Part shown: positions 388-61,087 of the stretch, piece after piece
Numbering within the stretch: position 1 is the stretch's first letter
Layout: every line of letters begins with the position of its first letter
DNA from: Zootoca vivipara
Lineage: Eukaryota
NCBI RefSeq assembly: GCF_963506605.1
Contig: NC_083281.1
Location: 24,800,001-24,864,000 of the forward strand
Length of the DNA: 64,000 bases
Reading direction: 5' to 3'
Program-made: the position numbers and the translations under genes
Notes under the pieces: generated by a model
Seen by the model: the letters and a program-made list of their open reading frames with translations, nothing else
The model's database searches: none
What the model was told of the DNA's origin: nothing

Positions 388-782
388 TGTTGTTTAGTCG
401 TTTAGTGGTGCCTGACTGTTTGTGACCCCATGGACCATAGCACGCCAGGCACTCCTGTCTTCCACTGCCTCCCGCAGTTGGTCAGACTCATGTTGGCAGC
501 TTCAAGAACACTGTCCAACCATCTCGTCCTCTGTCGTCCCCTTCTCCTTGTGCCCTCAATCTTTCCCAACATCAGGGTCTTTTCCAGGGAGTCTTTTCTT
601 CTCATGAGGTGGCCAAAGTATTGGAGCCTCAGCTTCAGGATCTGTCCTTCTAGTGAGCACTCAGGATAGTGGATAGGTTTGATCTTCTTGCAGTCCATGG
701 GACTCTCAAGAGTCTTCTCCAGCACCATAATTCAAAAGCATCAATTATTCGGCGATCAGCCTTCTTTATGGTCCAGCTCTCA
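388..782 (-). mobile_element. RTE Bov-B LINE 3' fragment
   Basis: Encodes WTIKKADRR.IDAFELWCWRRLLRVPWTARRSN and LRLQYFGHLMRR..SLEKTLMLGKIEG. Confidence 0.9.
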
Positions 783-1449
783 CTGGAGGAACCGGAAAGC
801 CACTCCAGTATCCCTGCCAAGAAAACTCCATGGACAAACACGACAGAACAAACTTAGTTGGTCTCTAAGGTGCTACTGGACAATTTTTTATTCATTTAGT
901 GAGCAGCACTGCAGGTGAACCAATAACATCCCTTATGATGCTTTGGCATTCTTAGAATTTTCTGCAATGCAAAAGGGTCACATGACCAATGTTGTACAGG
1001 AGTTCCTCAGCAGACAAGTTAGTGTTGAAAGGGCTCCCTTTAAGTAGAACAAAGTATCTCTGCACATGCTAATGCAATCCTTTCACTGTCCCCGCCTCCC
1101 ACACATCTATTTTGATGCAAATAACAGGAGAGGTCTATGCAGAGCGAGGGTTGAAAGAAAGAACTTGACATACTTCAGATATGAGGCAGAACCTTGTTGT
1201 CCTTGCATTCTTAGATTAATAAGTCTGTGCTCAGTGCGCATCTGGTGTACTGCAGATGCAGATCTGGTTGTGCAACCATCATCATGGGCATCTCATGCCC
1301 TGATCAGCCGAATTATCCTCATAGCACTCCTCTGCTCTCCCAGCCTGCCATTTACACCCCAGCCTATGGATTTTATCCAACATTGCTCATGCTCAGCTGA
1401 AATGAATGCACCTGATTAACTAGAATGTTTTTTTTAAAAAAAAATCTAG

Positions 1450-1680
1450 GAAATTTCTATGGTCCTTTGCAAATATTCTATTCTACACTGCAGTACCGAT
1501 AGTAGGAAGGCCGGGCTCCGGGTAGGCCTCTTTCATCAATGCCACACTACTTAAGTGCAGACAACTCCGGTCCTGTAAGACTGGCAAAGAGGCAACAACA
1601 GCAGAGGTAAAGGATTGCCCACATGGGATGCTTCCGCAGGTGATCCTTTGGGACTTTCCAGAAAAGGCAGCATCCCCGCT
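1450..1680 (+). pseudogene. Decayed IRG G-domain fragment upstream of paralog 1
   Basis: 1502 onward translates VGRPGSG*ASFINA (G1 lysine codon is TAG at 1523). After frameshifts it reads TGKEATTAEVKDCPHGMLPQVILWDFP, which aligns with paralog 2 TGIQMTTLQVKDYPHPTLPQVILWDHP. Confidence 0.85.
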
Positions 1681-1912
1681 GTCAAATCAGTTGCTTGGAG
1701 CTCCCTCTGGTCAGGAATGCGGCTTTGGCTATTTGTTGCAATCTTATCTCATGCTCGCTCGTTACCTTCGCTATCTTTTTTGCTTTTAGTAGTATGACAA
1801 TCAGGAGGGAGAGGGTATAAAAGGGAGAGAGAGGGAGAGAGCAGGACAGAGAAAAGCGTGAGAAACCTCAAAGCAAAACCTCCAAGCTACAAAAAAATCG
1901 GTCCGGCAGCAG
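1650..1912 (+). promoter_or_regulatory. Predicted promoter and non-coding exon 1 of IRG paralog 1
   Basis: kB-type GGGACTTTCC 1650-1659, degenerate IRF element ACCTTCGCTATC near 1764, TATAAAA 1816-1822, splice donor CAG/GTAAAG with intron 1913-3324. Confidence 0.65.
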
Positions 1913-2163
1913 GTAAAGAGTTGAACTTTTCTCCTGGGTCTAGAATGATTTCTGTTTCTTTTTTAGCTTGTTTGCGTTAAAGGAGACTCTGAGCTCCTTG
2001 CTTGGTGGGTGGCAGAAACTGTTGTTGTTGTTGTTGTTTATCTTTTACCTTTTTATTGTTATTTTTTACCTTTTACCTTTTAACATTTTTATTGTTATTA
2101 TATTAACCATTACATTATTGTAACACTATTTTGATATCATATACCATAGCATATTATAAACAA

Positions 2164-2197
<34 letters not shown>

Positions 2198-3352
2198 GAT
2201 GTTCTAGAAGGCTGCCCTTTTCCCCCAAGGCAAAGGAATAAATAACATGCCATCAACAGGGAGCAAGCAGAGCTCATGCTACCAGAAGAGTCCCCCCTGT
2301 TTAATAAATGGCGTTCATTGCAATGCAGTTCATGACCCCACCCCCTTTGTCAGAGGGGGGAACGGGGTGCAGAACAGAGGAATACAGCAACTTCTGTTCT
2401 CCAAACAATGCCCTGAGTGCTGAAGAGGCAGAGACCATCTGGGCTGCCTCTTCAGCCAATGGACCCTACAGGACCAGTTGTATATTCCTGCATTGCAGGG
2501 TGTTGGAGTAGATGATCCTTCGGGTCCCTTCCAACTCTACAGTTCTACGATCCTACAACTTTCTCAAGTTGCCCTCTCGGGGCTTTCTGTGTCCTTCCCT
2601 GACTGTGGTACCAAAGGTGAAACTTCCCTTCTCCAGCTGAAAAATCGCCTCCCCATATCAATTAAAACAAACAAAACTCCACTGATAACACCCCACACTT
2701 AATGAAACATGCAGTTAGGTCCTCAGAATGTCTTTAATTCTAAAAAAGGGTTTCATGCTCTTTTTTCCCTTTAGCTGTATTTCATTTAAATATTTATCTA
2801 TATATATATATAAATGAAAACTGGGCATGCGGGTTATTAGCCACTTTTCTCCGAAACAGCTTCACCAATTGCGTTCAAATTTGGCCACAATGTCCCAAGC
2901 GAATGTCCGAAGGCTCTTATAAAGTTTGCTAAGACAGATGTCACACTACCGCCAGGTTAAATCCCCAAAAAACCGTGTTTCAAAACACACCACTCAGACG
3001 AAAATGCATGCTGGGAAAAGAACCAGGTTGCAAACCAGCATATTTATTTATGAAATGTTTTATCCAAAGTTTTAGCCACATCTCACATAAACATGTTTTA
3101 AGGATTATGTGTGAATGCATGCACATATACACTTTTGAGAGATTGACAACAGGCACAATTCTTCACTTTATTGAAATCCTACCAACTGCTGCTCAAACAA
3201 CACACTGGTCTCAGAGATATGCCCTAAGTAAATTGATTTCCCCACATAAACCATGGATTGTAAAGATGTCCATAAAAGTGTGTGGAAAACTATCTAACTA
3301 TTACAGTTTTCTTCTCTTTCTCAGATAAAGTGAGCCACAAGGAATCACTGTC

Positions 3353-4585
3353 ATGGATCCTGCCATAACAATAGAAACCTTAAAAAAAGACCTTGCTGAA
3401 ATGAAGGCTGCTTTCGAGAAAAAAACATTTGAAGCTGTTTCAGCTGAAGTTCAACAGCAGTCAAATTTATTAAATAACATCACATTGGAAATTGCCATCA
3501 CAGGAAGATCAGGTGTTGGGAAGTCATCTTTCGTCAATGCCCTTCGAGGAATGGAAGATTATGCAGAGGGTGCAGCTAAAACGGGGGTGACAGAAACAAC
3601 AATGGTGCCACAAGAATATTCACACCCCACATTCCCCAAAGTCAAATTTTGGGATCTACCAGGATTTGGAAAAGATAACTTTAGTGCAGAGGAATACCTA
3701 GAGGAGGTCAATTTCAGCAAGTATGATTTTTTCATCATCATCGCCTCAGGGCGCTTCACTGAGGATGACACCAACTTGGCTCTTGAGATCCAGAAAAATA
3801 AGAAGAAATTCTACTATGTGCGCAGCAAAGTGGATGTTGATATAGATAATGACAGGAAGTCAAAAGGCATCAAGGAGGGGGACAGCGATAGGAAGATGCA
3901 GTCTGAGAAAGAGACGCTTGACACTGTACGGACAGATAGCTATGATAATTTGAAGGCGTTAGGTGTGTCTTCTCCAAGGGTCTTTCTAATATCGAGGTGG
4001 GATTTGAGCAAGTATGATTTCCCCCTGCTTCAAGAGACCATTGAAAAGGAACAGGATGAACTCAAGAGAGATGTTTTAATCATGTGTCTTCCGATTTTTA
4101 CAAAAGATAGCATTAAAAAGAAGAAGGCTGCTATGGAGAGCCTGATATGGAAAAATGCCATGGTGAGTTGTACTGTTGGGTTGATTCCTGTCCCGTTCCT
4201 ATCATTTGGTTGTGACATTGCCATTGTGGTTTCGACAATGAGGGATATCTGCAAAGTTTTTGGCTTGGATGAAAATTCCCTCAATATACTAGCAAACCGA
4301 GTGGAGAAAGATGTTGAAGAGTTGAAATCCGTTATTGAACATACCCCAAGCACCGGTAAGATCACGGCAGAATTCGTCATGGATATCTTGAAGAGGTCAG
4401 CAATGTGGGGAGCAATCACAGCGGTAGAGATGGTCCTGGGTTTCATACCTCTGTTGGGGTCTCTCTATGGTGGGGGCAGTTCTTTTGCTACCACATTCTA
4501 CTTGCTGAATAATTTCCTGGAAAAAGCTGTGAAAGATGCAGAGAAAGTTCTGGCAAAGGCTGCTGAGCCTAAGAGACACAAGTAA
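3353..4585 (+). CDS. Immunity-related GTPase (IRG, p47 family; interferon-inducible GTPase 5/IRGC-like), paralog 1, single coding exon
   Basis: 410 aa ORF with G1 GRSGVGKS, switch I GAAKTGVTETT, G3 WDLPG, YDFFIII..RF, G4 RSKVD, G5 FLISRW, YDFPLLQETI. Splice acceptor (ttttcttctctttctcag) ends at 3324, 28 nt before the ATG. Confidence 0.93.
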   Translation: MDPAITIETLKKDLAEMKAAFEKKTFEAVSAEVQQQSNLLNNITLEIAITGRSGVGKSSFVNALRGMEDYAEGAAKTGVTETTMVPQEYSHPTFPKVKFWDLPGFGKDNFSAEEYLEEVNFSKYDFFIIIASGRFTEDDTNLALEIQKNKKKFYYVRSKVDVDIDNDRKSKGIKEGDSDRKMQSEKETLDTVRTDSYDNLKALGVSSPRVFLISRWDLSKYDFPLLQETIEKEQDELKRDVLIMCLPIFTKDSIKKKKAAMESLIWKNAMVSCTVGLIPVPFLSFGCDIAIVVSTMRDICKVFGLDENSLNILANRVEKDVEELKSVIEHTPSTGKITAEFVMDILKRSAMWGAITAVEMVLGFIPLLGSLYGGGSSFATTFYLLNNFLEKAVKDAEKVLAKAAEPKRHK

Positions 4586-8728: not shown

Positions 8729-9164
8729 CCTTAGGTTTGCATGGCCCTGCGATTGAATCAGTCTGAGCACAAACTTCTCAGACTCTGCCCAACACCATCT
8801 GATTTACAACACTGCTTTGGCTTTCTGAACAGCTGAGAGCAAACTGCAAGGGACTTATGTTCCATGTTGAAGTTTCTGTGGCGCTGAGAATGGAATTTCA
8901 TGAGGAGAATTGCGGCAACTGAGAAAGAGACTTGGGACAATATGGCAGCAGGGGCTCTAGAGCTAAGTGTTGCTAGCCAAATTTCAGTTTATTTAAGAAC
9001 ATGTTTCACTTGGGCTGTGCATCAGATCCAGCCCAATCTAATTAATGAATTGGACTGGGCCAATTTGTATCAACATAGGATTGGGTCAGATTATGTTGAG
9101 GCAACCCATCTCACTCCCTATTCCATCTTTAATAACAATTAATATATTTGTAATCACAACAACA

Positions 9165-26563: not shown

Positions 26564-27814
26564 CTAGTGCTCTGGTTCTAGGGCTTTCTTTCGAACCCTT
26601 TCAGCATCCTCAGCTAGATTATTGACAAAGCTCAACAGCATCCAATAAGTGATAGCAAAAGACACCCCTGCTGCTACCAAGCTTCTAACTAGGGAAGGTG
26701 GGAATAATTCTTTTGCATAATTGGTTATTTTCTTTATAACGAGATCGATGGTAATTTCTTCCATCTGAGGAGACTTCATCACGGCCTTCAGTTCTTCAAC
26801 AGGCTTCCTGGCCAATCTGGCTAGCCTAGCTAAGGAGTCATCATCCAACTCAAATCTTTTGTAGAAGGCAACCATGGACCCAAGCAAGAGGGCAACATCA
26901 CAAGCCAGAGGAAGGTCTGGAATGGGAATAGCATTGATGCCAGCAGATGCCAGGGATATTTTCCATATGTGGCTCTTCAGCACAGATTTCTTCTTTTCCG
27001 TGACTTCAGGGGAAAACATGGGAAGGCTGAGCAGGAATGCAAGTCTCTTCAGACTGTGCAGATCTTTCTCCAACGTCTCCACCAGTTGGGGGAAGTCATA
27101 CTTGGCAAGGTCCCAGGAGGAGATCAGAAAGACTTGAGGGATGGTGTTCCTGAAGCACTTCTTAAGCTGCTTCTTTAAGTCATTCCTCATCTTCTCAAGG
27201 ACTTCCTCTTCATTGAAGGTATTTGGGTAAGACCTTTCCATGTTGTATACATCTGCATCTACTTTGGAGCGCACAAAATAACACTTCTTCTCCATCTCCT
27301 GGATTGCCTGAGCTAGGTCAGTGTGGTTGGATCGGAATCTCTCTGAGCCAACAATGATAAAGAAGTCATAGCTGGGGAAATCCACCATCTTAAGGTAACT
27401 CTCTGGGGAGAAATCTGGGGATCCAATTCCTGGCAGGTCCCAGAATTTCACTTTGGGATCTTTAGAATGCGTATAAACCTTTGGATTCAGTGTAGTTTCT
27501 GTCACTCCTACAGGGGCAGCACCATCATCTTCTGCCTTCTTGCCTCGGAGAGCATTGATGAGGGATGATTTCCCAGAGCCCGTCTCTCCAGTGATGGCAA
27601 TGTCAAGCTCAGTGTTTTCCATCTCCTCCATCTCCTCTTTTACCTCATAAGCTGCTTCCTGCATTCCACCATCACTGAAAACCTCCATAAACCTCTCATA
27701 TATCTTGATTGCTATATTGAAATATATCTTGGGGTCTACGTTCATGTCTGTATTTTTCAATATAGGCTGGATAATCTCAGGCAACAATGAAAGTTTTTCT
27801 ACATATGAATTCAT
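26564..27814 (-). CDS. Immunity-related GTPase (IRG family, IRGC-like), paralog 3
   Basis: 416 aa ORF with GETGSGKS, GVTETT, WDLPGIG, YDFFIIV..RF, RSKVD, FLISSW, YDFPQL. Acceptor ctttttcttctag (minus strand) ends at 27816, 1 nt before the ATG. Confidence 0.92.
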   Translation of the reverse strand: MNSYVEKLSLLPEIIQPILKNTDMNVDPKIYFNIAIKIYERFMEVFSDGGMQEAAYEVKEEMEEMENTELDIAITGETGSGKSSLINALRGKKAEDDGAAPVGVTETTLNPKVYTHSKDPKVKFWDLPGIGSPDFSPESYLKMVDFPSYDFFIIVGSERFRSNHTDLAQAIQEMEKKCYFVRSKVDADVYNMERSYPNTFNEEEVLEKMRNDLKKQLKKCFRNTIPQVFLISSWDLAKYDFPQLVETLEKDLHSLKRLAFLLSLPMFSPEVTEKKKSVLKSHIWKISLASAGINAIPIPDLPLACDVALLLGSMVAFYKRFELDDDSLARLARLARKPVEELKAVMKSPQMEEITIDLVIKKITNYAKELFPPSLVRSLVAAGVSFAITYWMLLSFVNNLAEDAERVRKKALEPEH

Positions 27815-28419
27815 CCTAGAAGAAAAAGGGAGAGCTCAGACAGGCTTTGTCAATACTATTGGCCCATCTAGCTGGGAAACTCAGTGGTGATTTACACTCA
27901 GCTCAAATATAAATATTCTCTGCTCAGCAAAAAAAAAAAAGTTTGAATTTTTGGGAATATTTTTAGTAAACAGGGAAGAGGGACAGAGAAAGATGAAGGG
28001 ACGGCAACTATGTGGCGTGAGAGCTTATCCCAAGAGCGTCTCTCTCCACTGTGTCAACCCAAAGGAAAGGAAAAGAGGCAGGCACCAAGAGGAGGAGGAG
28101 GAGGAGGGCAGCTTCCTAGCAGCTAAAGGAGGGATATGTCAAATTAACACGCAGCATCGTTTGAGAGGGAGACCCTGGTTGGTTTCACAGCAGTTACTTA
28201 AAGTTTTTATACTAGCACTAGCTCAATAGTGATGGCATGTTATTTATTCCCATTGTAGCAGGGAAGAAGGGCACCCTTCTCCAACATTAATAATAGTACA
28301 GTAATAATAAATAATTCTGGCCGCCCCACCCCACCCGCCTAGCAAGGAGCTCAGAGTCAATCAAGCTCAAAAAGAAACGGAAATCATCATAATCTCAAGA
28401 GAAAAGTTCAGCTCCTAAC

Positions 28420-28764
28420 CTGCTGCCAGCCCGATTTTTTACGGTAAACCTCAGTCCACTCCTCGGAGGATTCCTCTTCCAGGTTTCTTAACACTTTTCT
28501 CCTTCCAACTCTCTTCCTTTCTCTCTTCTTTTCCTTCTACCTCCTGTTCTTCGCACTACTAAAAGCAAAAACGAAAGCGAAGTCGAGAGCGAAGACGATG
28601 TAAGATTGCAGGAGAATTTGAAACTTTCCCTCCCCCTCCCATGAGACTGGGGGTAATCCCCTATTTCCCGATTGCAGCAAATAGCAAAAGCAGCATTCCT
28701 CGCTAGGGGGGAGCATGGAGCAGCTGCTTGATAGACGAGATTCTGCCTTTCATAGGAAGGTCCC
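28420..28764 (-). promoter_or_regulatory. Predicted promoter and non-coding exon 1 of IRG paralog 3
   Basis: Inverted homolog of the other promoters: GGGACCTTCC (28755-28764), GAAAGCGAAGT (28573-28583), donor CAG/GTTAGG at 28419. No TATA box retained. Confidence 0.55.
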
Positions 28765-28880
28765 AAAGGATCACTTGTGACACTTGGAGCGTCAGAGGTG
28801 GTTAGTCCTTCACCTCTGTTGTTGTTGCCTCTGTGGCAGTCTCAGCGGCACCCAAGTTGTCTGCAAGCCCACACAATCCA
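28750..28880 (-). pseudogene. Decayed IRG G-domain fragment upstream of paralog 3
   Basis: Minus strand reads CGLADNLGAAETATEATTTEVKD*..QVILWDL. Confidence 0.75.
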
Positions 28881-29985
28881 GATATTATTCCTTGACGGCT
28901 TCCTTCTTGTCGACTTTTGCATTGTTACATTGATAGGCTGCGAAAAGTGGAAGGGCTCTAAAGCTGTGGGGAATTGGGGCGTTAGAGGAAATAGTGGTTT
29001 ATTTTTTTGAAAAATTTTGATATTCTGCAGGGTGCCGAGCGGTTTTAGAGCCTGCACAAGAAGCTGCCTTTCCAGACCGGGCAGGCAGGCAGGACACCAA
29101 ACTCTCCCCAGAGTGTTCCTAGAAAAGCCATTGTCCCATCCACCATCCTCAGCCTGAGGAGGATATAATGCAAGTGATCATGACACTGCTACGCTCAAGG
29201 GTTTCTACAGCCATACGCAGAGAGGCTCGCCTTTCATTCCGCCAGCTTTCTGCAGCCTGGGGAGCTGAAGCTCTTCCGCACCCCCTTGCAGACCAGGCAG
29301 ACAGGAAGCAACTGGATCTGCAAAGTCAGTTGAGAAGCTGCTGCAGCAGGATCTTTTCCTATCCAGCCCACGGTGCCAGCAGTGGCAATTTTAATCTGAA
29401 CTTTTAGACACAGTGTATTGCGATCAGAGTTCAGAAACTGCTCGCGCTACTGGTAATAAAACTCCCTGTTGCAGAGAATGTGCCTATCACTATGGGACTT
29501 TCGAACTCTGAGATATGATAGCCAGATATCTAAAGGGCTGGCTGCCATATGGAGGGTGGTGCAAGCTTGCTTTCTCCTGCTCCAGAGGGTCGGACCTGAA
29601 CAAACAGCTTCCAGCTACAAGGAAAGAGATTCTGACTGAACACAAGGAAGATCTTTCTGACAGCGAGAGCTCTTTGACGGTGGAACGGAATCCCTCTGGA
29701 GTATTAGTATTAATCATAAAAATTTTAAAATGGGTGGAAGATGAATGCAGAAGAGGTCAATTCTAGATGCACAGGAATGGAAGCGACGAAATAAATCTGT
29801 TGGGTCAGTGGTGCTTTTATTTATCAGTTACATAATTTGTTTAAAGACTTTGTATCATATCATCATCATTTCTTCTGAGTTTTGATGCCGTGTGGGCCTC
29901 ACACTGCTTGCTTTTCCTTCCAATCAGGACCCAGCGCAGTCCAATAAATGATTTACAAGAAGGAGGACCTACAACAACCCCATTT

Positions 29986-30004
29986 AGCTTTCGTTTTCCC
30001 AGAA
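29986..30004 (+). promoter_or_regulatory. Overlapping ISRE-like plus GAS element between the divergent promoters of paralogs 3 and 4
   Basis: AGCTTTCGTTTTC overlapping TTCCCAGAA (TTCN3GAA). Homologous copies at 49439-49457, 60826-60844, 49049-49057 (GAS only) and a degenerate copy near 14775-14793. Confidence 0.55.
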
Positions 30005-30799
30005 AACAGCTGTTTGAGCAGAGTTGTGTGCTGGGCAGGGGAGCGGGAGAGGAAAACTTGTAAACAGGATGTAATTTCTGCTCCAAGGTCATAAAAACCC
30101 AAAACTACTTTCCTCTTTCAAGGTTATGCAGGATAAAGAGTTGCAAATAATCAGAAGCAGAGCATTTACTAAGAAATACGTGCCTGTACCAGTTTATTAA
30201 GCTTTTGTCGGAGATAAGCTCAAAGTACCTTGGTGATTTTAAACTGCATAGGGGTTTTCAGTCTCTGTTTGGGGTCTCCCATCAGAAGTATGTATGTCAT
30301 TCCAAGATCAAAACCTGTGATACATGGCCAACACTGATGATCTGCAGTGCACAGCTACAACAAGGCACAGCGTATCTGTGAGTTTATGAACATTCCCAGT
30401 TTATAGACCTTGACAGTGAAAACTGACAGGTCTGAGCAGCGCTCCATGTGAATCTATATAATATGACTTATGATGCTTTTTTGATGCAAATAACAGGAGA
30501 GGTCTATTCAGAGAGAGGGTTGAAATAACTTGACACACTTCAGATATGAGGCAGAACCTTGTCCTTGCATTCTTAGATTAATAAGTCTGTGCCAGTGCGC
30601 ATCTGGTGTGCTGCAGGTGCAGATCTGGTTGTGCAACCATCATCATGGGCATCGCATGCCCTGATCAGCCGAATTTCCCTCAGAACACTGCTCTGCTCTC
30701 CCAGCCTGCCTATGGATTTTATCCAACATTACTCCTGCTCAGAGCACACCAATGAATGCACCTTATTAACTAGGTTTTTTTTTAAAAAAAAATGTAGGA

Positions 30800-30995
30800 A
30801 ATTCCTATGTTTGTTGGCAAATACTCTATTCTACATTGCAGCAGTAGGATTCTGGGCTCTGATGCCACGCGGCTTAAGTGCAGACAATTCAGGTGCTGCC
30901 GAGACTGGCAAAGAGGCAACAAGAGCAGAGGTAAAGGATTGCCCACATGGGATGCTTCCACAGGTGATCTTTGGGGACTTCGCAGAAAAGGCAGC
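30800..30995 (+). pseudogene. Decayed IRG G-domain fragment upstream of paralog 4
   Basis: ORF track 30589..31113 contains YIAAVG..RGLSADNSGAAETGKEATRAEVKDCPHGMLPQVIFGDF. Confidence 0.8.
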
Positions 30996-31259
30996 ATCCC
31001 CGCAGGCAATCGGGCTGCTTGGAGCTCACTCTGGCCAGGAATGCGGCTTGGGCTATTTGTTGCGATCTTATCTTATCCTCGCTTGTTACCTTCGCTTTCT
31101 TTTTTGCTTTTAGTGGTATGACGATCAGGAGGGAGAGGGTATACAGTAAAAGGGAGACAGAGGGAGAGAGGAGCAGGACGGAGAAAAGCGCGAAAACCTC
31201 GAAGCAAAACCTCAGAGGAGAGGACTGAGCTTGACTGCAAAAAATCGGTCCGGCAGCAG
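30974..31259 (+). promoter_or_regulatory. Predicted promoter and non-coding exon 1 of IRG paralog 4
   Basis: ACCTTCGCTTTC 31088-31099, altered TATA (tatacagtaaaa), donor CAG/GTAAGG at 31260. Predicted intron runs to 45465. Confidence 0.6.
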
Positions 31260-31628
31260 GTAAGGAGTTGAACTTTTCCCATGATTTCCGGTTTTTTTGT
31301 TTTTGTTTTTTGAGCTTGTTTGCTTTAAAGGAGACTCTGAGCTCCTTGCTTGGGGGGTAGCAGAAACAATGTTGTTGTTGTTGTTTACCCTTTTATTGTT
31401 ATTTTTATTATATTAACCATTACATAATAGCTATTGTGATATTATTATTATTGTTGTTGTTATTTATTATTATTAACAATGATGTTGGAGAAGGCTGCCC
31501 TTCTTCCCCGCAGCAAAGGGAATAAATAACATGCCACCCCCAGGGAGCAAGCAGAGCTGGTGCTACTATTAGAGTCTTCCCCCCCCCCCACGAATTTAAT
31601 AAAAGACGTTTATTAGCATTGCAATGCA

Positions 31629-34279
31629 CAAGGGCGTAGCCAGGATCAAAACTGGGGGGGGGGGCAAGCCATGATCATTCAGGGGCGGGGCCACAAAGTG
31701 GGAACGTGGGCGGGGCTACAGGGCCAGCTGGCCTGACAACATCGTGGTGGCGGCAGCGGCGGCAGCGGCCACCTTGTGCTTCTGGGGCTGGCAACGGCGG
31801 TGGCTACCCTGCTTGGCTGGAGAGGACGGGAGGGTCGGGCAGGCGAGAGGGGGTGACAGGGCGGGCGAGGGCAAGGCAAGGCACGGCCGCAGTCACGACG
31901 GCTCCGAGGCATTGCTGCATATCAGCATAATATTTCAACCATGTTGTGGGTTCAAGCCCCACCTTAGGAAAAAATTCCTGCATTGCAGGGGGTTGGACTA
32001 GATGACCCTTGTGGTCCCTTCCGACTACAATTCTATGATTCTATTGATATATTGCCATAGCATATGCATCATGCTGCTTTCTTGAATTGTCCTACTCCTA
32101 GGCATAGCAGCCAACTCCTAGAGGCCTAGGTGCCTCCCCCCCCAATTACTAGTAAATACCGTATGTGAAAGAGTCATCCCCCCCATGTTGATGGGCTTTC
32201 TATGTGGGGCTTATCTGCTCCCCCCCCCCGTATTTTATTAAGAATGGAAGAGGGAGGGAAGGAAGGAAGAAATAGAGAGAGGGATAACTCATATTTGTGG
32301 GTGCCTCTGGGTGACGCTGTGATGCTGGAACTCTGCAGCAAGAGGACGGGAGGGTCGGGCAGGCGAGAGGGGTTGGCAGGGCGGGCGAGGGAAGGCACGG
32401 CCGCAGTCACGACAGCTCCGAGGCGTTGCTGCATATCAGCATAATATTTCAACCATGTTGTGGGTTCAAGCCCCACCTTGGGGGAAAAATCCTGCATTGC
32501 AGGGGGTTGGACTAGATGACCCTTGTGTTCCCTTCCGACTACAATTCTATGATTCCATTGATATATTACCATAGCATATGCATCATTCTGCTTTCTTGAA
32601 TTGTCCTACTCCTAGGCATAGCAGCCAACTCCTAGAGGCCTAGGTGCCTCCCCCCCCCCAATTACTGGTAAATACCGTATTTGAAAGAGTCACCCCCCCA
32701 TTTTGATGGGCTTTCTATGTGGGGCTTATCTGCCCCCCCCCAGTATTTTATTAAGGATGGAAGAGGGAGGGAAGGAAGGAATAATAGAGAGAGGGATACC
32801 TCATATTTGTGGGTGCCTCCGGGTGATGCTGTGAAGCTGGAACTCTGCAGCAAGAGGATGGGAGGGTCGGGCAGGGGAGAGGGGGTGGCAGGGCGGGCGA
32901 GGGCGAGGCAAGACAGGGCCGCAGTCTCGATGGCTCCGAGGCGTTGCTGCATATCAGCATAATATTTCAACCATGTTGTGGGTTCAAGCCCCACATTGGG
33001 GAAAAATTCCTGCATTGCAGGGGGTTGGACTAGATGACCCTTGTGGTCCCTTCCGACTACAATTCCATGATTCTATTGATATATTACCATAGCATATGCA
33101 TGATTCTGCTTTCTTGAATTGTCCTAGGCATAGCAGCCAACTCCTAGAGGCCTAGGTGCCTCCCCCCAAAAAAGAAATTACTGGTAAATACTGTATTTTA
33201 AAGAGTCATCCCCCCCCATGTTGATGGGCTTTCTATGTGGGGCTTATCTGCCCCCCCCCCAGTATTTTATTGAGGATGGAAGAGGGAGGAAAGGAAGGAA
33301 GAAATAGAGAGAGGGATAACTCACATTTGTGGGTACCTCTGGGTGACGCTGTGATGCTAGAACTCTGCAGCAAGAGGAAGATACCGGTACACCTGTACAG
33401 GAGCCTTGTAAGCAGCTTTCTCTCTGCTTGATTTACAGCAGGCACGTCCAACAGGTAGATTGTGATCTACCAGTAGATCACTGGATGTCTGTGGTAGATC
33501 ACTGCTAGATCACTGGCACCCCTAAAAAAGCTCACCCAAATTTTTCCTCCTCCCTAAAAAAAGCTGAACTATGACCTGAAGCCCTAAACAAAAATGGGCC
33601 TCCCTCCCTCCTAAAAGAAGCTCAACAAGTTTGACCTAAACCCCCCAAAACAGGGCTTCCCTTCCTTAAAAAAACTCAACAGCTTTGACCTGAACCCCCC
33701 AAAAGCGGGTAGATCACTCCCAGTTTTTAACTCTGTGAGTAGATCAGAGTCTCATGGGAGGTGGCCACCCCTGATTTACAGTATACAGATGCAGGAGGAG
33801 GGGCAGACTGGAACACCAATGCTTTTTATAAACATCACTGTGTCTATCAAAGCTACAGCCCCCCCTTCTTATTCACTTCCTTTTAGCCTTGCAGGGCCAC
33901 CTTAGTCAAATTGAATCCTCTGCACCCTCATTAAATCGCCAATAGAACTGTTAATGCGATCCCTGAATGCCCATTAACAACTCTCACTGAATTACAATAG
34001 GGTGAATAGGGTGGACCTTGCCTGAAGGGATATTCTGCTCCATTGTCTTAACTGCTTAAGTACTGGTAGCCACTTTGCTTTATTTATTTGATGTGTTTTT
34101 GTTACAGCTGTGTTCCCGCCCCCAGCAAGTGGAGAGCTGCTCTTGCTAAAGCAAAGCCCTTTCCACTTCAGTTTTTGGAGGGGCAAAGTATTGGTTATGG
34201 TCTGTAAAATACAATAATTTTTTGCTTCTAGGGGGGGGTTGCAGCTGCCCCCTCCTGCCCCCCCCTGTCTACACCCATG
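31629..34279. mobile_element. 2.65-kb non-autonomous hAT element with three ~520-bp tandem units and a nested MITE (33439..33773)
   Basis: CAAGGGCGTAG...CTACACCCATG, TSD GCAATGCA (31621-31628, 34280-34287), nested TSD ATTTACAG. Empty site near 2320 in paralog 1. Confidence 0.8.
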
Positions 34280-35137: not shown

Positions 35138-35289
35138 NNNNNNNNNNNNNNNNNNNNNNNNNNNNNNNNNNNNNNNNNNNNNNNNNNNNNNNNNNNNNNN
35201 NNNNNNNNNNNNNNNNNNNNNNNNNNNNNNNNNNNNNNNNNNNNNNNNNNNNNNNNNNNNNNNNNNNNNNNNNNNNNNNNNNNNNNNNN
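35138..35289. other. Assembly gap (152 N)
   Basis: Run of N next to purine-rich low-complexity sequence. Confidence 0.99.
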
Positions 35290-36274: not shown

Positions 36275-36938
36275 GGTTAGACCATGGTGCTGATAACGCC
36301 AAGGTTGCAGGTCCCTGTATGGATCAGCTACATATTCCTGCATTGCAGGGGGTTGGAATGGCTGACCCTCAGGGTCCCTTCCAACGCTAGATTTCTATGA
36401 TTCTACAACTTTCCCAAGTCACCCTCCCCAGGCTTTCCATATCCTTCCATGACTGTGGTAAAGGTAAAGGTAAAGGCACCCCTGACCATTTGGTCCAGTC
36501 GCCACAACAGAGTTTAATAAATGGCATTTATTAGCATTGCAATGCAGTTCATGACCCCACCCCCTTTGTCAGAGGGTGGAACAGGGTGCAGAACAGAGGA
36601 ATACAGCAACTTCTATTCTGCAAACAATGCCCTGAGTGCTGAAGAAGCAGAGACCATCTGGGCTGCCTCTTAGGGCAGACGCCGGGCATATCAGTTTTAA
36701 GTAACTGCCCTGAAGCCAATGCAGCCGGCCTCCCTTTCCCGTATTATTTCCCTTTCACAGAGCCACCCCCCAGTCCCTGCAAGAAAGCAGCAGGAACACG
36801 GCTGTGCCCCAGCACGTGCTGTTGTGTAAAAATGGTATGTGTGCGCCACTTCTGATTAGAGAAACTGCATGGAAAAGGGTCTAGTCAGAGCAAAAGATGC
36901 TGGAGGTTCTCTCGGTTCTGGGTAGGTGTTGCCTGATG

Positions 36939-37095
36939 AGCCTGGATAGCTCAGTTGGTTAAACCGTGGTGCTGATAACACCAAGGTTGCAGGTTTGATC
37001 CCTGTATGGACCAGCTGCATATTCCTGCATTGCAGGGGGTTGGGCTGGATGACCCTCAGGGTCCCTTCCAACTCTACATATCCTTGATTCTATGA
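36939..37095 (+). mobile_element. tRNA-derived SINE with CR1-like tail
   Basis: tagctcagttggtt..gtggtgctgataacaccaaggttgcaggtttgatccc then cctgcattgcagggggttgg..gatgaccc..ttccaactct. Duplicate copy at about 36112-36405. Confidence 0.7.
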
Positions 37096-45493: not shown

Positions 45494-46726
45494 ATGGATC
45501 CTGCCGTAACAATAGAAACCTTAAAAAAAGACCTTGCTGAAGTGAAGGCTGCTTTGGATCAAAAGAAATTCGAAGCTGTTTCGGCTGAAGCTCAACATCA
45601 GTCAAATTTATTAAATAACATCACATTGGCAATTGCCATCACAGGAAGATCAGGTGCCGGGAAATCATCTTTTGTCAATGCCCTTCGAGGAATGGAAGAT
45701 GATGCAGAGGGTGCAGCTGAAACGGGGGTGACAGAAACAACAATGGTGCCACAAGAATATTCACACCCCACATTCCCCAAAGTCAAATTTTGGGATCTAC
45801 CAGGATTTGGAAAAGATAACTTTAGTGCAAAGGAATACCTAAAGAAGGTCAATTTCAGCAAGTATGATTTTTTCATCATCATCGCCTCAGGGCGCTTCAC
45901 TGAGGATGACACCAAATTGGCTCTTGAGATCTGTAAAAATAAGAAGAAATTCTACTATGTGCGCAGCAAAGTGGATATTGATATAGATAATGACAGGCGG
46001 TCAAAACGCATCGATGTGAAGGACACCCATGAGATGATCCAGTCTGAGAAGAAGACTCTTGACATTATACAGAAAGAAAGCTATGATAATTTGAAGGCAT
46101 TGGGTGAGTCTTCTCCAAGGGTCTTTCTAATATCGAGGTGGGATTTGAGCAAGTATGATTTCCCCCTACTTCAAGAGACCATCGAAAAGGAACAGGATGA
46201 ACTCAAGAGAGATGTTTTAATCATGTGTCTTCCGATTTTTACAAAAGATAGCATTAAAAAGAAGAAGGCTGCTATGGAGAGCCTGATATGGAAAAAAGCC
46301 ATGGTGAGTTGTACTGTTGGGTTGATTCCTGTCCCGTTCCTATCATTTGGTTGTGACATTGCCATTGTGGTTTCGACAATGAGGGATATCTGCAAAGTTT
46401 TTGGCTTGGATGAAGATTCCCTCAATATACTAGCAAACCGAGTGGGGAAACCTGTTGAGGAGTTGAAATCTGTTATTGAACATACCCCAAGCACCGGTAA
46501 GATCACGACAGAATTCGCCATGGATCTCTTGAAGAGGTCAGCACTGTGGGGAGCAATCACAGTGGTAGAGGTGGCTCTGAATTTCATACCTCTGTTGGGG
46601 TCTCTCTTTGGTGGGGGCAGTTCTTTTGCTACCACGTTCTACATGCTGAATAATTTCCTGGAAAACGCTGTGAAAGATGCAGAGAAAGTTCTGGCAAAGG
46701 CTGCTGGGCCCAAGAGACGCAAGTAA
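45494..46726 (+). CDS. Immunity-related GTPase (IRG family), paralog 4, close duplicate of paralog 1
   Basis: 410 aa ORF colinear with 3353..4585, with GRSGAGKS, WDLPG, RSKVD, SRW. Acceptor ends at 45465. Confidence 0.93.
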   Translation: MDPAVTIETLKKDLAEVKAALDQKKFEAVSAEAQHQSNLLNNITLAIAITGRSGAGKSSFVNALRGMEDDAEGAAETGVTETTMVPQEYSHPTFPKVKFWDLPGFGKDNFSAKEYLKKVNFSKYDFFIIIASGRFTEDDTKLALEICKNKKKFYYVRSKVDIDIDNDRRSKRIDVKDTHEMIQSEKKTLDIIQKESYDNLKALGESSPRVFLISRWDLSKYDFPLLQETIEKEQDELKRDVLIMCLPIFTKDSIKKKKAAMESLIWKKAMVSCTVGLIPVPFLSFGCDIAIVVSTMRDICKVFGLDEDSLNILANRVGKPVEELKSVIEHTPSTGKITTEFAMDLLKRSALWGAITVVEVALNFIPLLGSLFGGGSSFATTFYMLNNFLENAVKDAEKVLAKAAGPKRRK

Positions 46727-58010: not shown

Positions 58011-58571
58011 AGGAAGACCCCCGCCACCGGGGGTCTACCTAGAGCCGGCCCAGGTCTCTGCCTCTTCAGACTCAGGGCATTGTTTGGAGAATAGAAGTTG
58101 CTGTATTCCTCTGTTCTGTACCCCGTTCCCCGCTCTGACAAAGAGGGTGGGGTCATGAACCGCATTCCAATGCTAATAAACGTCATTTACTGTATTAAAC
58201 TCTGCGGGGGGGGGGGGCGACTCTTATAGTAGCACCAGCTCTGCTTGCTCCCTGGGGATGGCATGTTATTTATTCCCTTTGACGCGGGGAAGAAGGGCAG
58301 CCTTCTCCAACATCATTGTTAATAATAATATTATTGTTTATAATATGATATGATATATGATATCACAATAGCTATAATGTAACGGTTAATATAATAACAA
58401 TAAAAAGGTAAAAAGGTAAAAAATAACAATAAAAAGGTAAATGATAAACAACAACGACAACTGTTTCTGCCACCCCCACCAAGCAAGGAGCTCGGAGTCT
58501 CCTTTAAAGCAAACAAGCTCAAAAAGAAACGGAAATCATTCTAGACCCAGGAGAAAAGTTCAACTCCTTAC

Positions 58572-58851
58572 CTGCTGCTGGACCGATTTTTTTGCAGCCA
58601 AGCTCTGCCCTCTTCTCGGAAGTTTTGCTTCATGGTTTTCCACGCTTTTCTCCGTCCTGCTCTTTCTCTGTGGCTCCCTTTTATACCCCCTCCCTCCTGA
58701 TCGCCACACTCCTAAAAGCAAAAAGGAAAGCGAAGGTAACCAGCGAGGATGAGATAAGATAGCAACAAATAGCCGCAGCCGCATTCCTGGCCAGAGGGAG
58801 CTCCAAGCAGCCCGTTTGCCAGCGGGGATGCTGCCTTTCCTGGGAAGTCCC
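58572..58851 (-). promoter_or_regulatory. Predicted promoter and non-coding exon 1 of IRG paralog 5
   Basis: GGGACTTCCC (58842-58851), GAAAGCGAAGGT (58726-58737), TATAAAA (58679-58685, minus strand), donor CAG/GTAAGG at 58571. Confidence 0.62.
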
Positions 58852-59045
58852 AAAGGATCACCTGTGGAAACATCCCATGTGGGCAATCCTTTACCTCTGC
58901 TGTTGTTGCCTCTTTGCCAGTCTCAGCAGCACCTGAGTTGTCCGCACTTAAGCAGCGTGGCATTGATGAAAGAGGACTATGCAGAGCCTGTCCTTCCTAC
59001 GGTACTACTGCAGTGTAGAATATTTGCAAAGGACCTTAGAAATTT
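58835..59045 (-). pseudogene. Decayed IRG G-domain fragment upstream of paralog 5
   Basis: Minus strand VGRTGSA*SSFINA, followed by ORF 58712..58963 LSADNSGAAETGKEATTAEVKDCPHGMFPQVILWDFPGK. Confidence 0.85.
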
Positions 59046-59102
59046 CCTAGATTTTTTTAAAAAAACCCTTCTAGTTAATAAGGTGCATTCATTGGTGTGC
59101 TA

Positions 59103-60040: not shown

Positions 60041-61087
60041 TGTAGATGTACACTGAGCACAGACTTATTAATATAAGAATGCAATGACAACAAGGTTCTG
60101 CCTCATATCTGAAGTGTGTCAAGTTCTTTCTTCCAACCCTCTCTCTGGACCTCTCCTGTTATTTGCATCAAAATAGATGGTGGGGGCAGTGACAGTGAAA
60201 AAATTGCATTAGCATGTGCAGAGATAATTTGTTCTGCTTAAAGGAAGCCCTTTCAACACTAAATTGTCTGCTGGGGGAATCCTGCACATCATTTGTCACA
60301 TGACCCATTTGCATTGCAGAAAATTCTGAGAATGGAAAAGCATCATAAGGCATGTTATACAGTATTGGTTCCCATGCTCAGACCTGTCATGTTTCACTGT
60401 CAAGGTCCATGAACTGGGAATGTGCATAAACTGACAGATAGGCTGTGCCTTGTTGTAGCTGTGCACTGAAGATCAGCAGTATTGACCATGTATCACTGGT
60501 TTTGATCTTGGAATGACATACTGCAAACACGGAGCAGGAATCCTAACACATATATACTTCTGATGGGAGACCCCAAACAGAGACTGAAAACCCCTATGCA
60601 GTTTAAAATCACCAAGGTACTTTGAGCTCATCTCTGACAAAAGCCTAATAAATTGGTACAGGCATGTATTTGTTACTAAATGCTCTGCTGCTGATCATTT
60701 GCAACTTTTATCCTGCATAACCTTGAAAGAGGTTTTTATGATCTTGGAGCAGAAATTACATCCTATTTATGAGTTTTCCCTTCCCCCTCCCATGCCCAAC
60801 ACACAGCTCTGCTCAAACAGGTGTTTTCCGAGAAAACGAAAGCTAAATGGCATTGCTGTAGGTCCTCCTTCTTGTAAATCATTTCCTAGACTGTGCTGGG
60901 TCCTGATGAAGAGCAAAAGCAAGCAGTGTGAGGCTCACGTTGCATCAAAACTCAGGAGAAATATGATGATATGGTACAAAGACTTTAAACAAATTAGTTC
61001 TTTTGACTGTTGGGAAAAACTTCCTTTGCATGCTTCTCCTCTGCTTTCAGGCTGGAAAGATTTATGCTTCCTTTTGAACACGCACAG

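What the first reader, a model, noticed from the sequence alone, without database searches (positions are those of the whole stretch)
1450..1912. Every IRG promoter in the cluster sits on a dead IRG G-domain
Seen: just upstream of the predicted first exon of all five genes (1450-1680, 16470-16770, 28750-28880 minus, 30800-30995, 58835-59045 minus) is a same-strand, frameshifted relic of IRG coding sequence. It shows G1 (VGRPGSG*ASFINA), switch I (GAAETGKEATT) and G3 (PQVILWDFP) and is most similar to paralog 2 (VKDYPHPTLPQVILWDHPGK). The relic is shared by three strongly diverged IRG lineages, so it predates their split, yet it is still readable. Inference: an ancestral tandem IRG pair lost coding function in the upstream copy, which was exapted as the promoter and then spread as one cassette. 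Tandem IRG pairs are known in mouse (Irgb2-b1); I do not know of a report of a paralog-derived IRG promoter.
Basis: partly seen in the sequence, partly recalled or inferred. Interest (0 to 1): 0.9.

Follow-up and report, generated by a model that had tools for sequence, protein, structure and literature searches.

The report
IRG gene fossil in shared promoter cassette
All five interferon-type IRG immune genes in this lizard cluster carry the same ~0.85-kb upstream cassette, which starts with a dead ~200-base piece of another IRG gene; the piece is real, but it marks a promoter cassette copied between old paralogs and has not been shown to be the promoter.

Summary
Exactly five copies of a ~0.85-kb cassette lie in the window, one upstream of each IRG coding exon. 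Each cassette begins with a same-strand, broken fragment of IRG coding sequence that covers G1 to G3. A profile of the five cassettes matches paralog 2 (g2) at CDS nt 82-285 with E=3e-28.

- The fossil does not predate the split of the three IRG lineages. The five relics form one clade inside the squamate g2 lineage. Synonymous sites between lineages are saturated (dS>2), yet the cassettes differ by only K=0.27-0.42. The cassette therefore reached the g1- and g3-type genes later, by non-allelic recombination, gene conversion or partial duplication.
- The core promoter is not IRG-derived. An ISRE-like run, the TATA box and a 5'UTR exon all lie 3' of the fossil.
- One spliced contig confirms exon 1 (donor at 1912) joined to the coding exon at 3325 for g1, with no depth over the relic.
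- The 3' half of the fossil (switch I to G3) is the least variable block of the cassette, and it carries NF-kB-like and STAT-like words made from the W-D-F-P-G-K codons. A role as an upstream enhancer is possible but unproven.

The parts
1450..2293 (+). Cassette A, upstream of g1: relic, proximal promoter, 5'UTR exon 1 and the start of intron 1
   Evidence: nhmmer profile hit, E=1e-249; five-way alignment A1
1495..1667 (+). Relic A: g2-like IRG G1 to G3 fragment, with a TAG at the P-loop lysine codon (1523-1525) and a frameshift before switch I
   Evidence: tblastn E=1e-13 to g2; nhmmer relic profile; frame translations; Pfam IIGP 16.4 bits
1577..1667 (+). 3' half of relic A (switch I to G3). 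It is the least variable block of the cassette and holds GGGACTTTCC (1650-1659), written by the W-D-F-P codons.
   Evidence: 0.35 vs 0.59 steps/site, lowest 1.6% of contiguous blocks; Fisher tests; motif scan
1767..1789 (+). Proximal ISRE-like run, antisense. It reads TTCGCTATC...TTTTGCTTTT in A, TTCGCTTTC in C, D and E, and a perfect TTTCGCTTTC in B. It has no IRG homology.
   Evidence: alignment columns 568-592; motif scan; nhmmer finds no IRG hit for the post-relic part
1816..1823 (+). TATA box TATAAAAG. It is kept in A and E, is near-consensus in B, is disrupted by a 5-nt insertion in D (GTATACAGTAAAAG) and is absent in C.
1846..1912 (+). 5'UTR exon 1 of g1. The 3' end is exact. The 5' end is inferred from the TATA box and from at least 48 nt of contig on the shorter side of the joint.
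   Evidence: joint 1912|GT..AG|3325 in a contig of run X1; depth 0 over 1503-1836
1949..1958 (-). Perfect ISRE core GAAANNGAAA in intron 1, 37 nt after the donor. It is also perfect at the homologous place in C (28374) and E (58526) and present in a looser form in B (17077).
2181..2294 (+). Conserved intronic block that ends the shared cassette, 78-86% identical across all five copies. Function unknown.
3325..4585 (+). Coding exon of g1 (acceptor AG at 3323-3324, ATG at 3353, 410 aa)
16468..17271 (+). Cassette B, upstream of g2. The relic covers 16468-16527 and 16627-16766, split by a ~100-bp short repeat at 16528-16626. The original donor reads GA, and a new AG|GTGAGC lies 9 nt downstream.
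19756..20913 (+). g2 (385 aa), the living paralog closest to the relic. Its lineage has orthologs across squamates and turtles.
28202..28959 (-). Cassette C, upstream of g3. The relic is at 28746-28914. It has no TATA box; the donor is CAG|GTTAGG.
26564..27814 (-). g3 coding exon (416 aa)
30798..31577 (+). Cassette D, upstream of g4. The relic is at 30850-30991 with most of G1 deleted. The intron to the coding exon is about 14 kb and is filled with repeats and a large retroelement ORF.
45494..46726 (+). g4 coding exon (410 aa)
58218..59046 (-). Cassette E, upstream of g5. The relic is at 58834-59006 and is the best-preserved copy.
   Evidence: Pfam IIGP 25.1 bits
53440..54639 (-). g5 coding exon (399 aa)
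29986..30008 (+). Distal composite ISRE+GAS (AGCTTTCGTTTTCCCAGAAAAC), about 1.15 kb upstream of the D TATA box. It lies outside the five-way shared cassette.
60822..60845 (-). Homologous distal ISRE+GAS of E (AGCTTTCGTTTTCTCGGAAAAC)

Best explanation
Each of the five IRG genes is preceded by a copy of one ~0.85-kb 5' cassette. In order, the cassette holds a ~200-bp dead fragment of a g2-lineage IRG coding exon (codons ~28-95, G1 to G3), ~150 bp of non-IRG sequence with an ISRE-like run and a TATA box, a ~65-nt 5'UTR exon with its splice donor, an intronic ISRE, and a conserved intron block.

The fragment formed once, in a squamate g2-type gene. That was after g2 had already separated from the g1- and g3-type lineages. 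The whole cassette was later placed in front of genes of all three lineages, by non-allelic recombination, gene conversion or partial duplication with a breakpoint in intron 1.

The fossil therefore sits at the 5' edge of a mobile regulatory cassette and marks its single origin. Transcription starts downstream of the fossil, from the non-IRG core promoter; this is shown for g1 and inferred for the other four genes. Any contribution of the fossil's 3' half as an upstream NF-kB/STAT-type element is inference only.
For: - There are five cassettes and no orphan copies. IRG homology is confined to g2 CDS nt 82-285; the pre-relic, post-relic, exon 1 and intron parts give nothing.
- Between lineages the CDSs are 47-54% nt identical, dS is 2.3 to infinity and 4-fold sites are 38-44% identical. 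The cassettes attached to the same genes are 68-77% identical, K=0.27-0.42. The regions just upstream of the ATGs are not alignable between lineages. The shared part therefore ends inside intron 1.
- The relics form one clade (SH-aLRT 97) inside the squamate g2 clade (99). That clade is sister to turtle g2-like proteins (100). g1/g4/g5 group with a gecko protein and a turtle clade (98).
- An AU test rejects a relic older than the three-lineage split (p=0.031, delta lnL 26.9).
- The relics keep GAAETG, AEVKD and WD(F/L)P, as in Salvator, Tiliqua and Rhineura g2 orthologs. They lack the lacertid g2 changes AAATG, LQVKD and WDHP.
- B and C share a stop and a 6-nt insertion although g2 and g3 are far apart. 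Within the g1 lineage, g1 and g4 have CDS dS=0.07 but cassette K=0.155. The 5' and 3' parts of the genes thus have different histories.
- The splice joint 1912|3325, with no depth over the relic, supports a start site downstream of it.
- In B the lost donor is replaced by a new AG|GTGAGC 9 nt downstream. This suggests that exon 1 of B is still in use.
Against: - RNA support is one low-depth contig (3.9x) from a run whose RNA label is a guess, and it covers g1 only. Three raw RNA runs show almost no expression.
- Exon 1 use by g2, g3, g4 and g5 is inferred from homology. C lacks a TATA box.
- The tree placement rests on about 55 relic residues. The careful tree search did not finish, so a quick tree was used.
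- The AU test does not reject the relics lying just outside the squamate+turtle g2 clade (p=0.14).
- Strong purifying selection over the whole cassette, in place of later spread, cannot be formally excluded without orthologous loci from other species.
- The low variability of the relic's 3' half argues against a purely passive fossil.
Confidence: 0.62

Rival explanations
1. The relic's 3' half (switch I to G3, ~90 bp) has been exapted as an upstream enhancer of the cassette. Former codons now serve as transcription-factor sites: an NF-kB-like GGGAC(T/C)T(T/C)CC from W-D-F/L-P, and a STAT-like TTCN3-4GAA from F-P-G-K. This reading is compatible with the later spread of the cassette.
For: - This block is the least variable in the cassette: 0.35 vs 0.59 steps/site, in the lowest 1.6% of contiguous blocks.
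- It has about half the variable sites of the rest of the cassette in both cassette clades: A/D/E 10% vs 20% (p=0.02), B/C 14% vs 33% (p=0.0003).
- GGGRNNYYCC is kept in 4 of 5 copies and TTCN3-4GAA in 4 of 5 at the homologous place.
Against: - The block was chosen after looking at the alignment, so the p-values are optimistic.
- It is not significantly less variable than the intron part across all five copies (p=0.23) or in B/C (p=0.09).
- The NF-kB-like word is inherited from coding sequence, and the living genes carry it too.
- The STAT spacer varies (N3 in D, N4 in B, C and E, none in A).
- No motif library, chromatin data or reporter data were available.
- The 5' half of the relic is the most variable part of the cassette.
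Confidence: 0.22
2. One reading: an ancestral tandem IRG pair lost the upstream copy before the three lineages split. That dead copy became the promoter and has been inherited vertically with every descendant gene.
For: - The relic is present, on the same strand, upstream of all five genes.
- Tandem G-domain+IRG proteins exist in reptiles: 598-aa proteins of Salvator and snakes, and a 609-aa Gopherus model.
- An earlier scan note reports a G-G-full IRG elsewhere in this genome. I did not check it.
Against: - The relic is specifically squamate-g2-like (36/54 residues vs 20/54 to g1 and g3).
- The AU test rejects a relic older than the three-lineage split (p=0.031).
- Cassette K of 0.27-0.42 against saturated CDS dS is incompatible with co-divergence.
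- The core promoter elements lie in non-IRG sequence.
- No other IRG debris flanks the fragment, although the flanks are as well kept as the relic.
Confidence: 0.06
3. An origin variant: the fragment arose in one step, by a partial tandem duplication of a g2-type gene. The duplicated segment ran from ~150 bp upstream of the TATA box to codon ~95. This placed codons 1-95 directly in front of the gene's own promoter, and later copying trimmed the 5' end to codon ~28.
For: - The 3' junction is sharp, right after WD(F/L)PGK. It abuts sequence that is well conserved among the cassettes but has no IRG homology.
- One event explains this junction.
- The relic and the promoter would then both be g2-derived, which fits the g2 affinity.
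Against: - No g2 codons 1-27, acceptor or intron remnants are detectable upstream of relic B or of any other relic.
- This model cannot be told apart from two deletions or from a filler-DNA insertion using this window alone.
Confidence: 0.1

Closest known systems
Mouse Irga6 gene structure and its duplicated 1A/1B promoter-exon modules (PMC2848866; Bekpen et al. 2005 as cited there)
   Same: A short 5' untranslated exon (~100 nt) is spliced to one long coding exon, with the acceptor 20-30 nt before the ATG. ISRE and GAS words lie near the first exon. Promoter and exon-1 modules are duplicated within the cluster and are nearly identical near the donor. In the window, exon 1 is ~65 nt, the acceptor is 28 nt before the ATG, and ISRE-like words flank exon 1.
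   Different: That paper describes no coding-sequence fossil inside the mouse promoter modules. In the window, one module is shared by paralog lineages whose coding exons are saturated at synonymous sites.
Mouse Irga2 expressed from the promoter and 5' exon of the dead neighbour Irga1 (PMC2848866)
   Same: A living IRG gene depends on regulatory DNA tied to a dead IRG paralog in a tandem array.
   Different: In mouse the dead coding exon lies downstream of the shared promoter and is skipped by splicing. Here the dead fragment lies upstream of the promoter and is not in the transcript.
Tandem IRG proteins: mouse Irgb2-b1 (PMC3810784 listed; details from my own knowledge) and reptile G-domain+IRG models
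   Same: An IRG G-domain unit lies directly upstream of, and on the same strand as, a full IRG unit.
   Different: In those genes the upstream unit is coding and is spliced to the downstream one. Here it is a ~200-bp fragment broken by a stop and a frameshift, with a TATA promoter between it and the living gene.
Human IRGM driven by an ERV9 LTR (PMC2644816, abstract and title seen; details from my own knowledge)
   Same: An IRG gene whose promoter region is built from foreign or recycled DNA.
   Different: The recycled DNA there is a retroviral LTR that supplies the promoter itself. Here the recycled piece is paralog coding sequence, and it does not contain the core promoter.
Concerted evolution (gene conversion or unequal crossover) of 5' regions in tandem gene families (general knowledge)
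   Same: Non-coding 5' modules are much more alike than the coding parts they drive, and the trees for the 5' and 3' parts disagree.
   Different: The exchange here crosses lineages that split before squamates and turtles diverged. The module carries a pseudogene fragment that identifies the donor lineage.

Membership tests
IRG / p47 GTPase coding sequence (Pfam PF05049 IIGP), as the source of the relic | Significant match to the IIGP profile or to IRG proteins | tested here: met
   tblastn E=1e-13 (A) and 8e-11 (E) to g2. Pfam IIGP scores 25.1 bits (cut-off 24) for piece E and 16.4 bits for A; B, C and D alone are below detection. The DNA profile of the five copies matches the g2 CDS with E=3e-28.
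IRG / p47 GTPase coding sequence, as the source of the relic | G1 (GxxxxGKS), switch I (GAAxTG) and G3 (WDLPG) motifs in the right order and spacing | tested here: met
   VGRPGSG*AS......GAAETG... and ...VILWDFPGK appear in order and are colinear with g2 residues 38-95.
Pseudogene fragment (non-coding relic) | Disabling lesions, shared between copies, and absence from the mature transcript | tested here: met
   A and E share a TAG at the P-loop lysine codon and a 1-nt frameshift before switch I. B and C share a TAA and a 6-nt insertion. D has lost G1, and B has a repeat inserted. There is no read or contig depth over 1503-1836 (g1 only, low expression).
Interferon-inducible IRG promoter (mouse type: GAS plus ISRE upstream of a 5'UT exon) | A 5' untranslated exon spliced to the long coding exon | tested here: met
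   Joint 1912|GT..AG|3325 for g1. The donor is conserved or replaced in the other four copies, but they have no RNA test.
Interferon-inducible IRG promoter (mouse type: GAS plus ISRE upstream of a 5'UT exon) | ISRE and GAS elements near the start site | tested here: inconclusive
   An ISRE-like TTCGCTTTC run lies ~40-50 nt upstream of the TATA box in all five copies (perfect only in B). A perfect GAAANNGAAA lies in intron 1 of A, C and E. A composite ISRE+GAS lies 1-2 kb upstream of D and E. These are consensus words only; no binding or induction data exist.
Interferon-inducible IRG promoter | Induction by interferon or infection | not testable with these tools
   The three raw RNA runs show almost no g1 expression, and no stimulated sample is identified.
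Exapted (functional) regulatory element derived from coding sequence | Substitution rate below that of neutral flanks | tested here: inconclusive
   The 3' half of the relic is less variable than the rest of the cassette. The block was chosen post hoc and is not significantly different from the intron part across all five copies. The 5' half is the most variable part.
Exapted (functional) regulatory element derived from coding sequence | Effect on transcription when removed; factor occupancy | not testable with these tools
   Needs reporter deletions and ATAC or ChIP data.

The most novel reading that the evidence does not exclude
A ~90-bp stretch of former G-domain codons (switch I to G3) has become an inducible upstream enhancer. 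The W-D-F-P-G-K codons now act as NF-kB and STAT sites. This coding-derived enhancer travels with a portable promoter and 5'UTR cassette that put three anciently separated IRG lineages under one shared control.
Probability: 0.17. Interest if true: 0.7.

Novelty: new member of a known kind. Interest (0 to 1): 0.45.

Why it matters
IRG genes are fast-evolving effectors of cell-autonomous immunity, and how whole clusters come to be induced together is poorly understood outside the mouse. In this window the fossil acts as a barcode. It shows that one promoter and 5'UTR cassette, born next to a g2-type gene, was later installed in front of IRG genes whose coding exons had already diverged to saturation. 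That is a concrete, testable case of promoter swapping as a route to co-regulation of old paralogs. If the fossil's conserved 3' half also proves to bind NF-kB or STAT factors, it would be a clean example of coding sequence recycled into an enhancer. On present evidence the fossil is mainly a passenger and a historical marker, so the finding is interesting to specialists but does not change current understanding.

Tried and rejected
- **Cross-species DNA:** The cross-species test of constraint and of the cassette's age was not done.
- **Protein search with a relic piece:** the stop-free relic piece of E (89 aa) found nothing. With the tool's length limits and database content, this blank carries no weight.
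- **Rfam:** a scan of the whole window gave no hit. The conserved intron block is therefore not a known RNA family.
- **More IRG debris:** sensitive nhmmer and word-7 blastn searches looked in the pre-relic, post-relic, exon 1 and intron parts, and looked for g2 codons 1-27 or the g2 acceptor upstream of the relics. Nothing scored above chance.
- **CTGCAG before G1:** this word just before G1 looked like a splice acceptor. It aligns with the N-V-A-V codons of g2 and is probably inherited coding sequence.
- **GAG|GTAAAG inside the relic:** this conserved word looked like a donor. It corresponds to the L-Q-V-K codons of g2, and no RNA covers it.
- **Raw RNA runs:** X14-X16 gave almost no reads on g1. 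They neither place a start site nor test induction.
- **Tree search:** the careful search did not finish in time, so the quick tree was used.
- **AU test, narrower question:** the test of the relics lying outside the squamate+turtle g2 clade was not significant (p=0.14).
- **Stops:** relics were read through stops only with X at the breaks, or as separate stop-free pieces.

Full report
**What is there**

The window holds five intact single-exon IRG (p47 GTPase) genes:
- g1, 3353-4585 on the plus strand
- g2, 19756-20913 plus
- g3, 26564-27814 minus
- g4, 45494-46726 plus
- g5, 53440-54639 minus

g2 is 92% identical to an annotated IRG of Podarcis lilfordi and has full-length relatives across squamates and turtles. 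The window therefore comes from a lacertid lizard.

**Check of the observation**

tblastn with the five proteins finds short same-strand IRG fragments upstream of four genes:

| Site | Coordinates | E-value | Note |
|---|---|---|---|
| A | 1490-1666 | 1e-13 | 58% aa identity to g2 |
| C | 28745-28897 minus | 0.04 | |
| D | 30868-30981 | 2e-6 | |
| E | 58835-59024 minus | 8e-11 | split over two frames |

The fifth site (B, 16468-16766) escapes tblastn. It is DNA-homologous to the others, and a ~100-bp short interspersed repeat is inserted in it at 16528-16626.

A profile HMM of the five-way alignment finds exactly five copies in the window, one per gene and no orphans. The same profile hits the g2 coding exon at nt 82-285 with E=3e-28. 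g3 scores 4e-7 and the g1 group about 2e-5.

Pfam IIGP, run on stop-free pieces only, passes its cut-off for piece E (25.1 vs 24 bits) and is weaker for A (16.4 bits).

Shared lesions show a single origin of the dead fragment. A and E share a TAG at the P-loop lysine codon and a frameshift before switch I. B and C share a TAA and a 6-nt insertion.

**Anatomy of the cassette (A coordinates)**

| Coordinates | Element |
|---|---|
| 1450-1494 | short pre-relic stretch |
| 1495-1667 | relic, g2 codons ~28-95 |
| 1668-1766 | conserved sequence with no IRG homology |
| 1767-1789 | antisense ISRE-like run (TTCGCTTTC in C, D, E; perfect TTTCGCTTTC in B) |
| 1816-1823 | TATAAAAG |
| ~1846-1912 | 5'UTR exon ending CAG\|GT |
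| 1949-1958 | perfect antisense ISRE core in the intron |
| 2181-2294 | strongly conserved intron block, after which five-way homology stops |

nhmmer finds no IRG similarity in any part other than the relic.

D and E also share a distal composite ISRE+GAS 1-2 kb upstream (29986-30008 and 60822-60845). It lies outside the five-way cassette.

**RNA evidence**

One contig of run X1 joins 1912 to 3325 across a GT..AG intron. Depth over 1503-1836 is zero. This confirms the donor of exon 1 and the acceptor 28 nt before the g1 ATG. It also places the transcript downstream of the relic.

The support is thin. The contig has depth 3.9 and the run's RNA label is a guess. Three raw RNA runs show almost no g1 expression. 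The other four genes have no RNA test.

In B the original donor reads GA, but a consensus AG|GTGAGC lies 9 nt downstream. That looks like compensation and suggests exon 1 of B is still used. C has no TATA box.

Between the three lineages the coding exons are 47-54% identical in nucleotides. dS is 2.3 to infinity and 4-fold sites are 38-44% identical, which means saturation. The cassettes in front of the same genes are 68-77% identical, K=0.27-0.42, and this includes their intron parts. The regions just upstream of the ATGs are not alignable between lineages. The 5' cassette and the coding exon therefore have different histories, with the boundary inside intron 1.

In a protein tree with a full-length backbone:
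- The five relics form one clade (SH-aLRT 97).
- That clade sits inside the squamate g2 clade (99), which is sister to turtle g2-like proteins (100).
- g1/g4/g5 group with a gecko protein and another turtle clade (98).

So the g1/g2 split is older than the squamate-turtle split, and the relic is younger than it. An AU test rejects a relic older than the split of the three lineages (p=0.031). It does not reject a position just outside the squamate+turtle g2 clade (p=0.14).

Residue by residue, the relics match squamate g2 orthologs at 34-36 of 54 positions. They match g1 and g3 at 20 of 54. The relics keep GAAETG, AEVKD and WD(F/L)P, as in Salvator, Tiliqua and Rhineura. They lack the lacertid-specific g2 changes AAATG, LQVKD and WDHP. 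The fragment therefore left the g2 line before those lacertid changes but well after the three lineages had separated.

The 5' and 3' parts also disagree at smaller scale. Cassettes B and C share derived characters although g2 and g3 are far apart. g1 and g4 have CDS dS=0.07 but cassette K=0.155.

The best reading is that the cassette, with its fossil, was installed in front of g1- and g3-type genes after the lineages split. The route would be non-allelic recombination, gene conversion or partial duplication.

**Is the relic 'the promoter'?**

The core elements (TATA box, ISRE-like run, exon 1) are not IRG-derived. The relic lies about 150-320 bp upstream of the TATA box.

Its two halves behave differently:
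- The G1-switch I half is the most variable part of the cassette (0.98 steps/site).
- The switch I-G3 half is the least variable (0.35 vs a mean of 0.59, lowest 1.6% of contiguous blocks).

In both cassette clades the 3' half has about half the variable sites of the rest: A/D/E 10% vs 20%, B/C 14% vs 33%. Three cautions apply. The block was picked after seeing the data. It is not significantly different from the intron part over all five copies (p=0.23). The core promoter and the intron block are nearly as well kept.

The 3' half contains GGGAC(T/C)T(T/C)CC, an NF-kB-like word, in 4 of 5 copies. It also contains a STAT-like TTCN3-4GAA in 4 of 5 copies. Both words are spelled by the former W-D-F/L-P-G-K codons. 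This keeps an enhancer role open. I put it at about one in five, and it is not demonstrated.

**Origin of the fragment**

Both ends of the IRG homology are sharp, and the flanks are as well conserved among cassettes as the relic itself. The fragment was therefore already ~200 bp long in the common ancestor of the five cassettes.

Three origins remain possible:
- A decayed upstream tandem partner, which needs two deletions.
- A one-step partial tandem duplication of a g2-type gene, running from ~150 bp upstream of its TATA box to codon ~95.
- A repair-type insertion.

No g2 codons 1-27 or acceptor remnants were found upstream of any relic. Reptile proteins made of a G-domain plus a full IRG exist (598 aa in Salvator and snakes, 609 aa in Gopherus). 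An earlier scan note reports a G-G-full IRG elsewhere in this genome; I did not check it. Tandem ancestry is therefore plausible but not shown.

**Comparison with what is known**

Mouse Irga6 has the same gene plan: a ~100-nt 5'UT exon, an acceptor 20 bp before the ATG, and ISRE and GAS words upstream. It also has two related promoter/exon-1 modules. Mouse Irga2 is transcribed from the promoter of its dead neighbour Irga1 (PMC2848866).

Human IRGM uses an ERV9 LTR (PMC2644816 listed; details from my own knowledge). Irgb2-b1 is a coding tandem (PMC3810784 listed; details from my own knowledge).

I found no paper on IRG genes of lizards, and none describing a paralog-derived fossil inside an IRG promoter module.

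The phenomenon itself belongs to a known kind: exchange of 5' modules within a tandem family, with a hitch-hiking pseudogene fragment.

**Limits**

- A protein search with a relic piece was blank.
- Rfam gave nothing.
- The N run at 35138-35289 was left alone.

**Verdict**

The timing claim is refuted. The 'exapted as promoter' claim is unsupported for the core promoter and remains open for an upstream element. Interest is moderate.

Noticed in passing
window 16528-16626 (also 2484-2555, 31974-32043, 32490-32555, 33006-33075, 36334-36405, 37021-37093): A ~70-100-bp short interspersed repeat, 80-87% alike between copies and found in both orientations, is inserted inside relic B and recurs in the first introns of g1 and g4.
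   Followed up: partly
window 17031-17046: In cassette B the ancestral exon-1 donor CAG|GT reads CAG|GA, and a consensus donor AG|GTGAGC lies 9 nt downstream. This looks like a compensatory donor shift.
   Followed up: partly
window 501-1001: This stretch is covered at very high depth in all RNA runs, on both strands, with many loose ends and odd joints. It is probably a high-copy transcribed repeat just upstream of cassette A, at the place where D and E carry their distal ISRE+GAS module.
   Followed up: no
window 8800-9021 (minus): A weak IRG C-terminal-like fragment (g3 residues 271-344, E=0.018) with no gene attached. It may be another IRG pseudogene scrap.
   Followed up: no
window 38905-42894 (minus): A 1329-aa ORF lies inside the ~14-kb first intron of g4. 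It is likely a young retroelement polyprotein; an earlier scan note calls it copia-like. I did not test it.
   Followed up: no
window 31821-33378: Three ~520-bp tandem units at ~92% identity lie in the g4 first intron, just after cassette D.
   Followed up: no
window 15009-15584 and 28985-29519: Cassettes B and C share a further ~570 bp of upstream homology (71.5% identity) that A, D and E lack. In B this stretch is separated from the relic by ~880 bp; in C it abuts the relic.
   Followed up: partly
g2, window 19936-20040: The window's g2 and its Podarcis orthologs read AAATG/AAVTG in switch I and WDHPG in G3. Other squamate orthologs, and the relic, keep GAAETG and WDLPG. The loss of the switch I glutamate is therefore lacertid-specific and younger than the relic.
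   Followed up: partly
proteins P0040-P0042 and P0009: Salvator and two snakes share a 598-aa protein made of a divergent N-terminal G domain plus a full IRG. A tortoise model (609 aa) fuses a g1-like G domain to a g2-like IRG. Coding tandem IRGs therefore seem widespread in reptiles.
   Followed up: no
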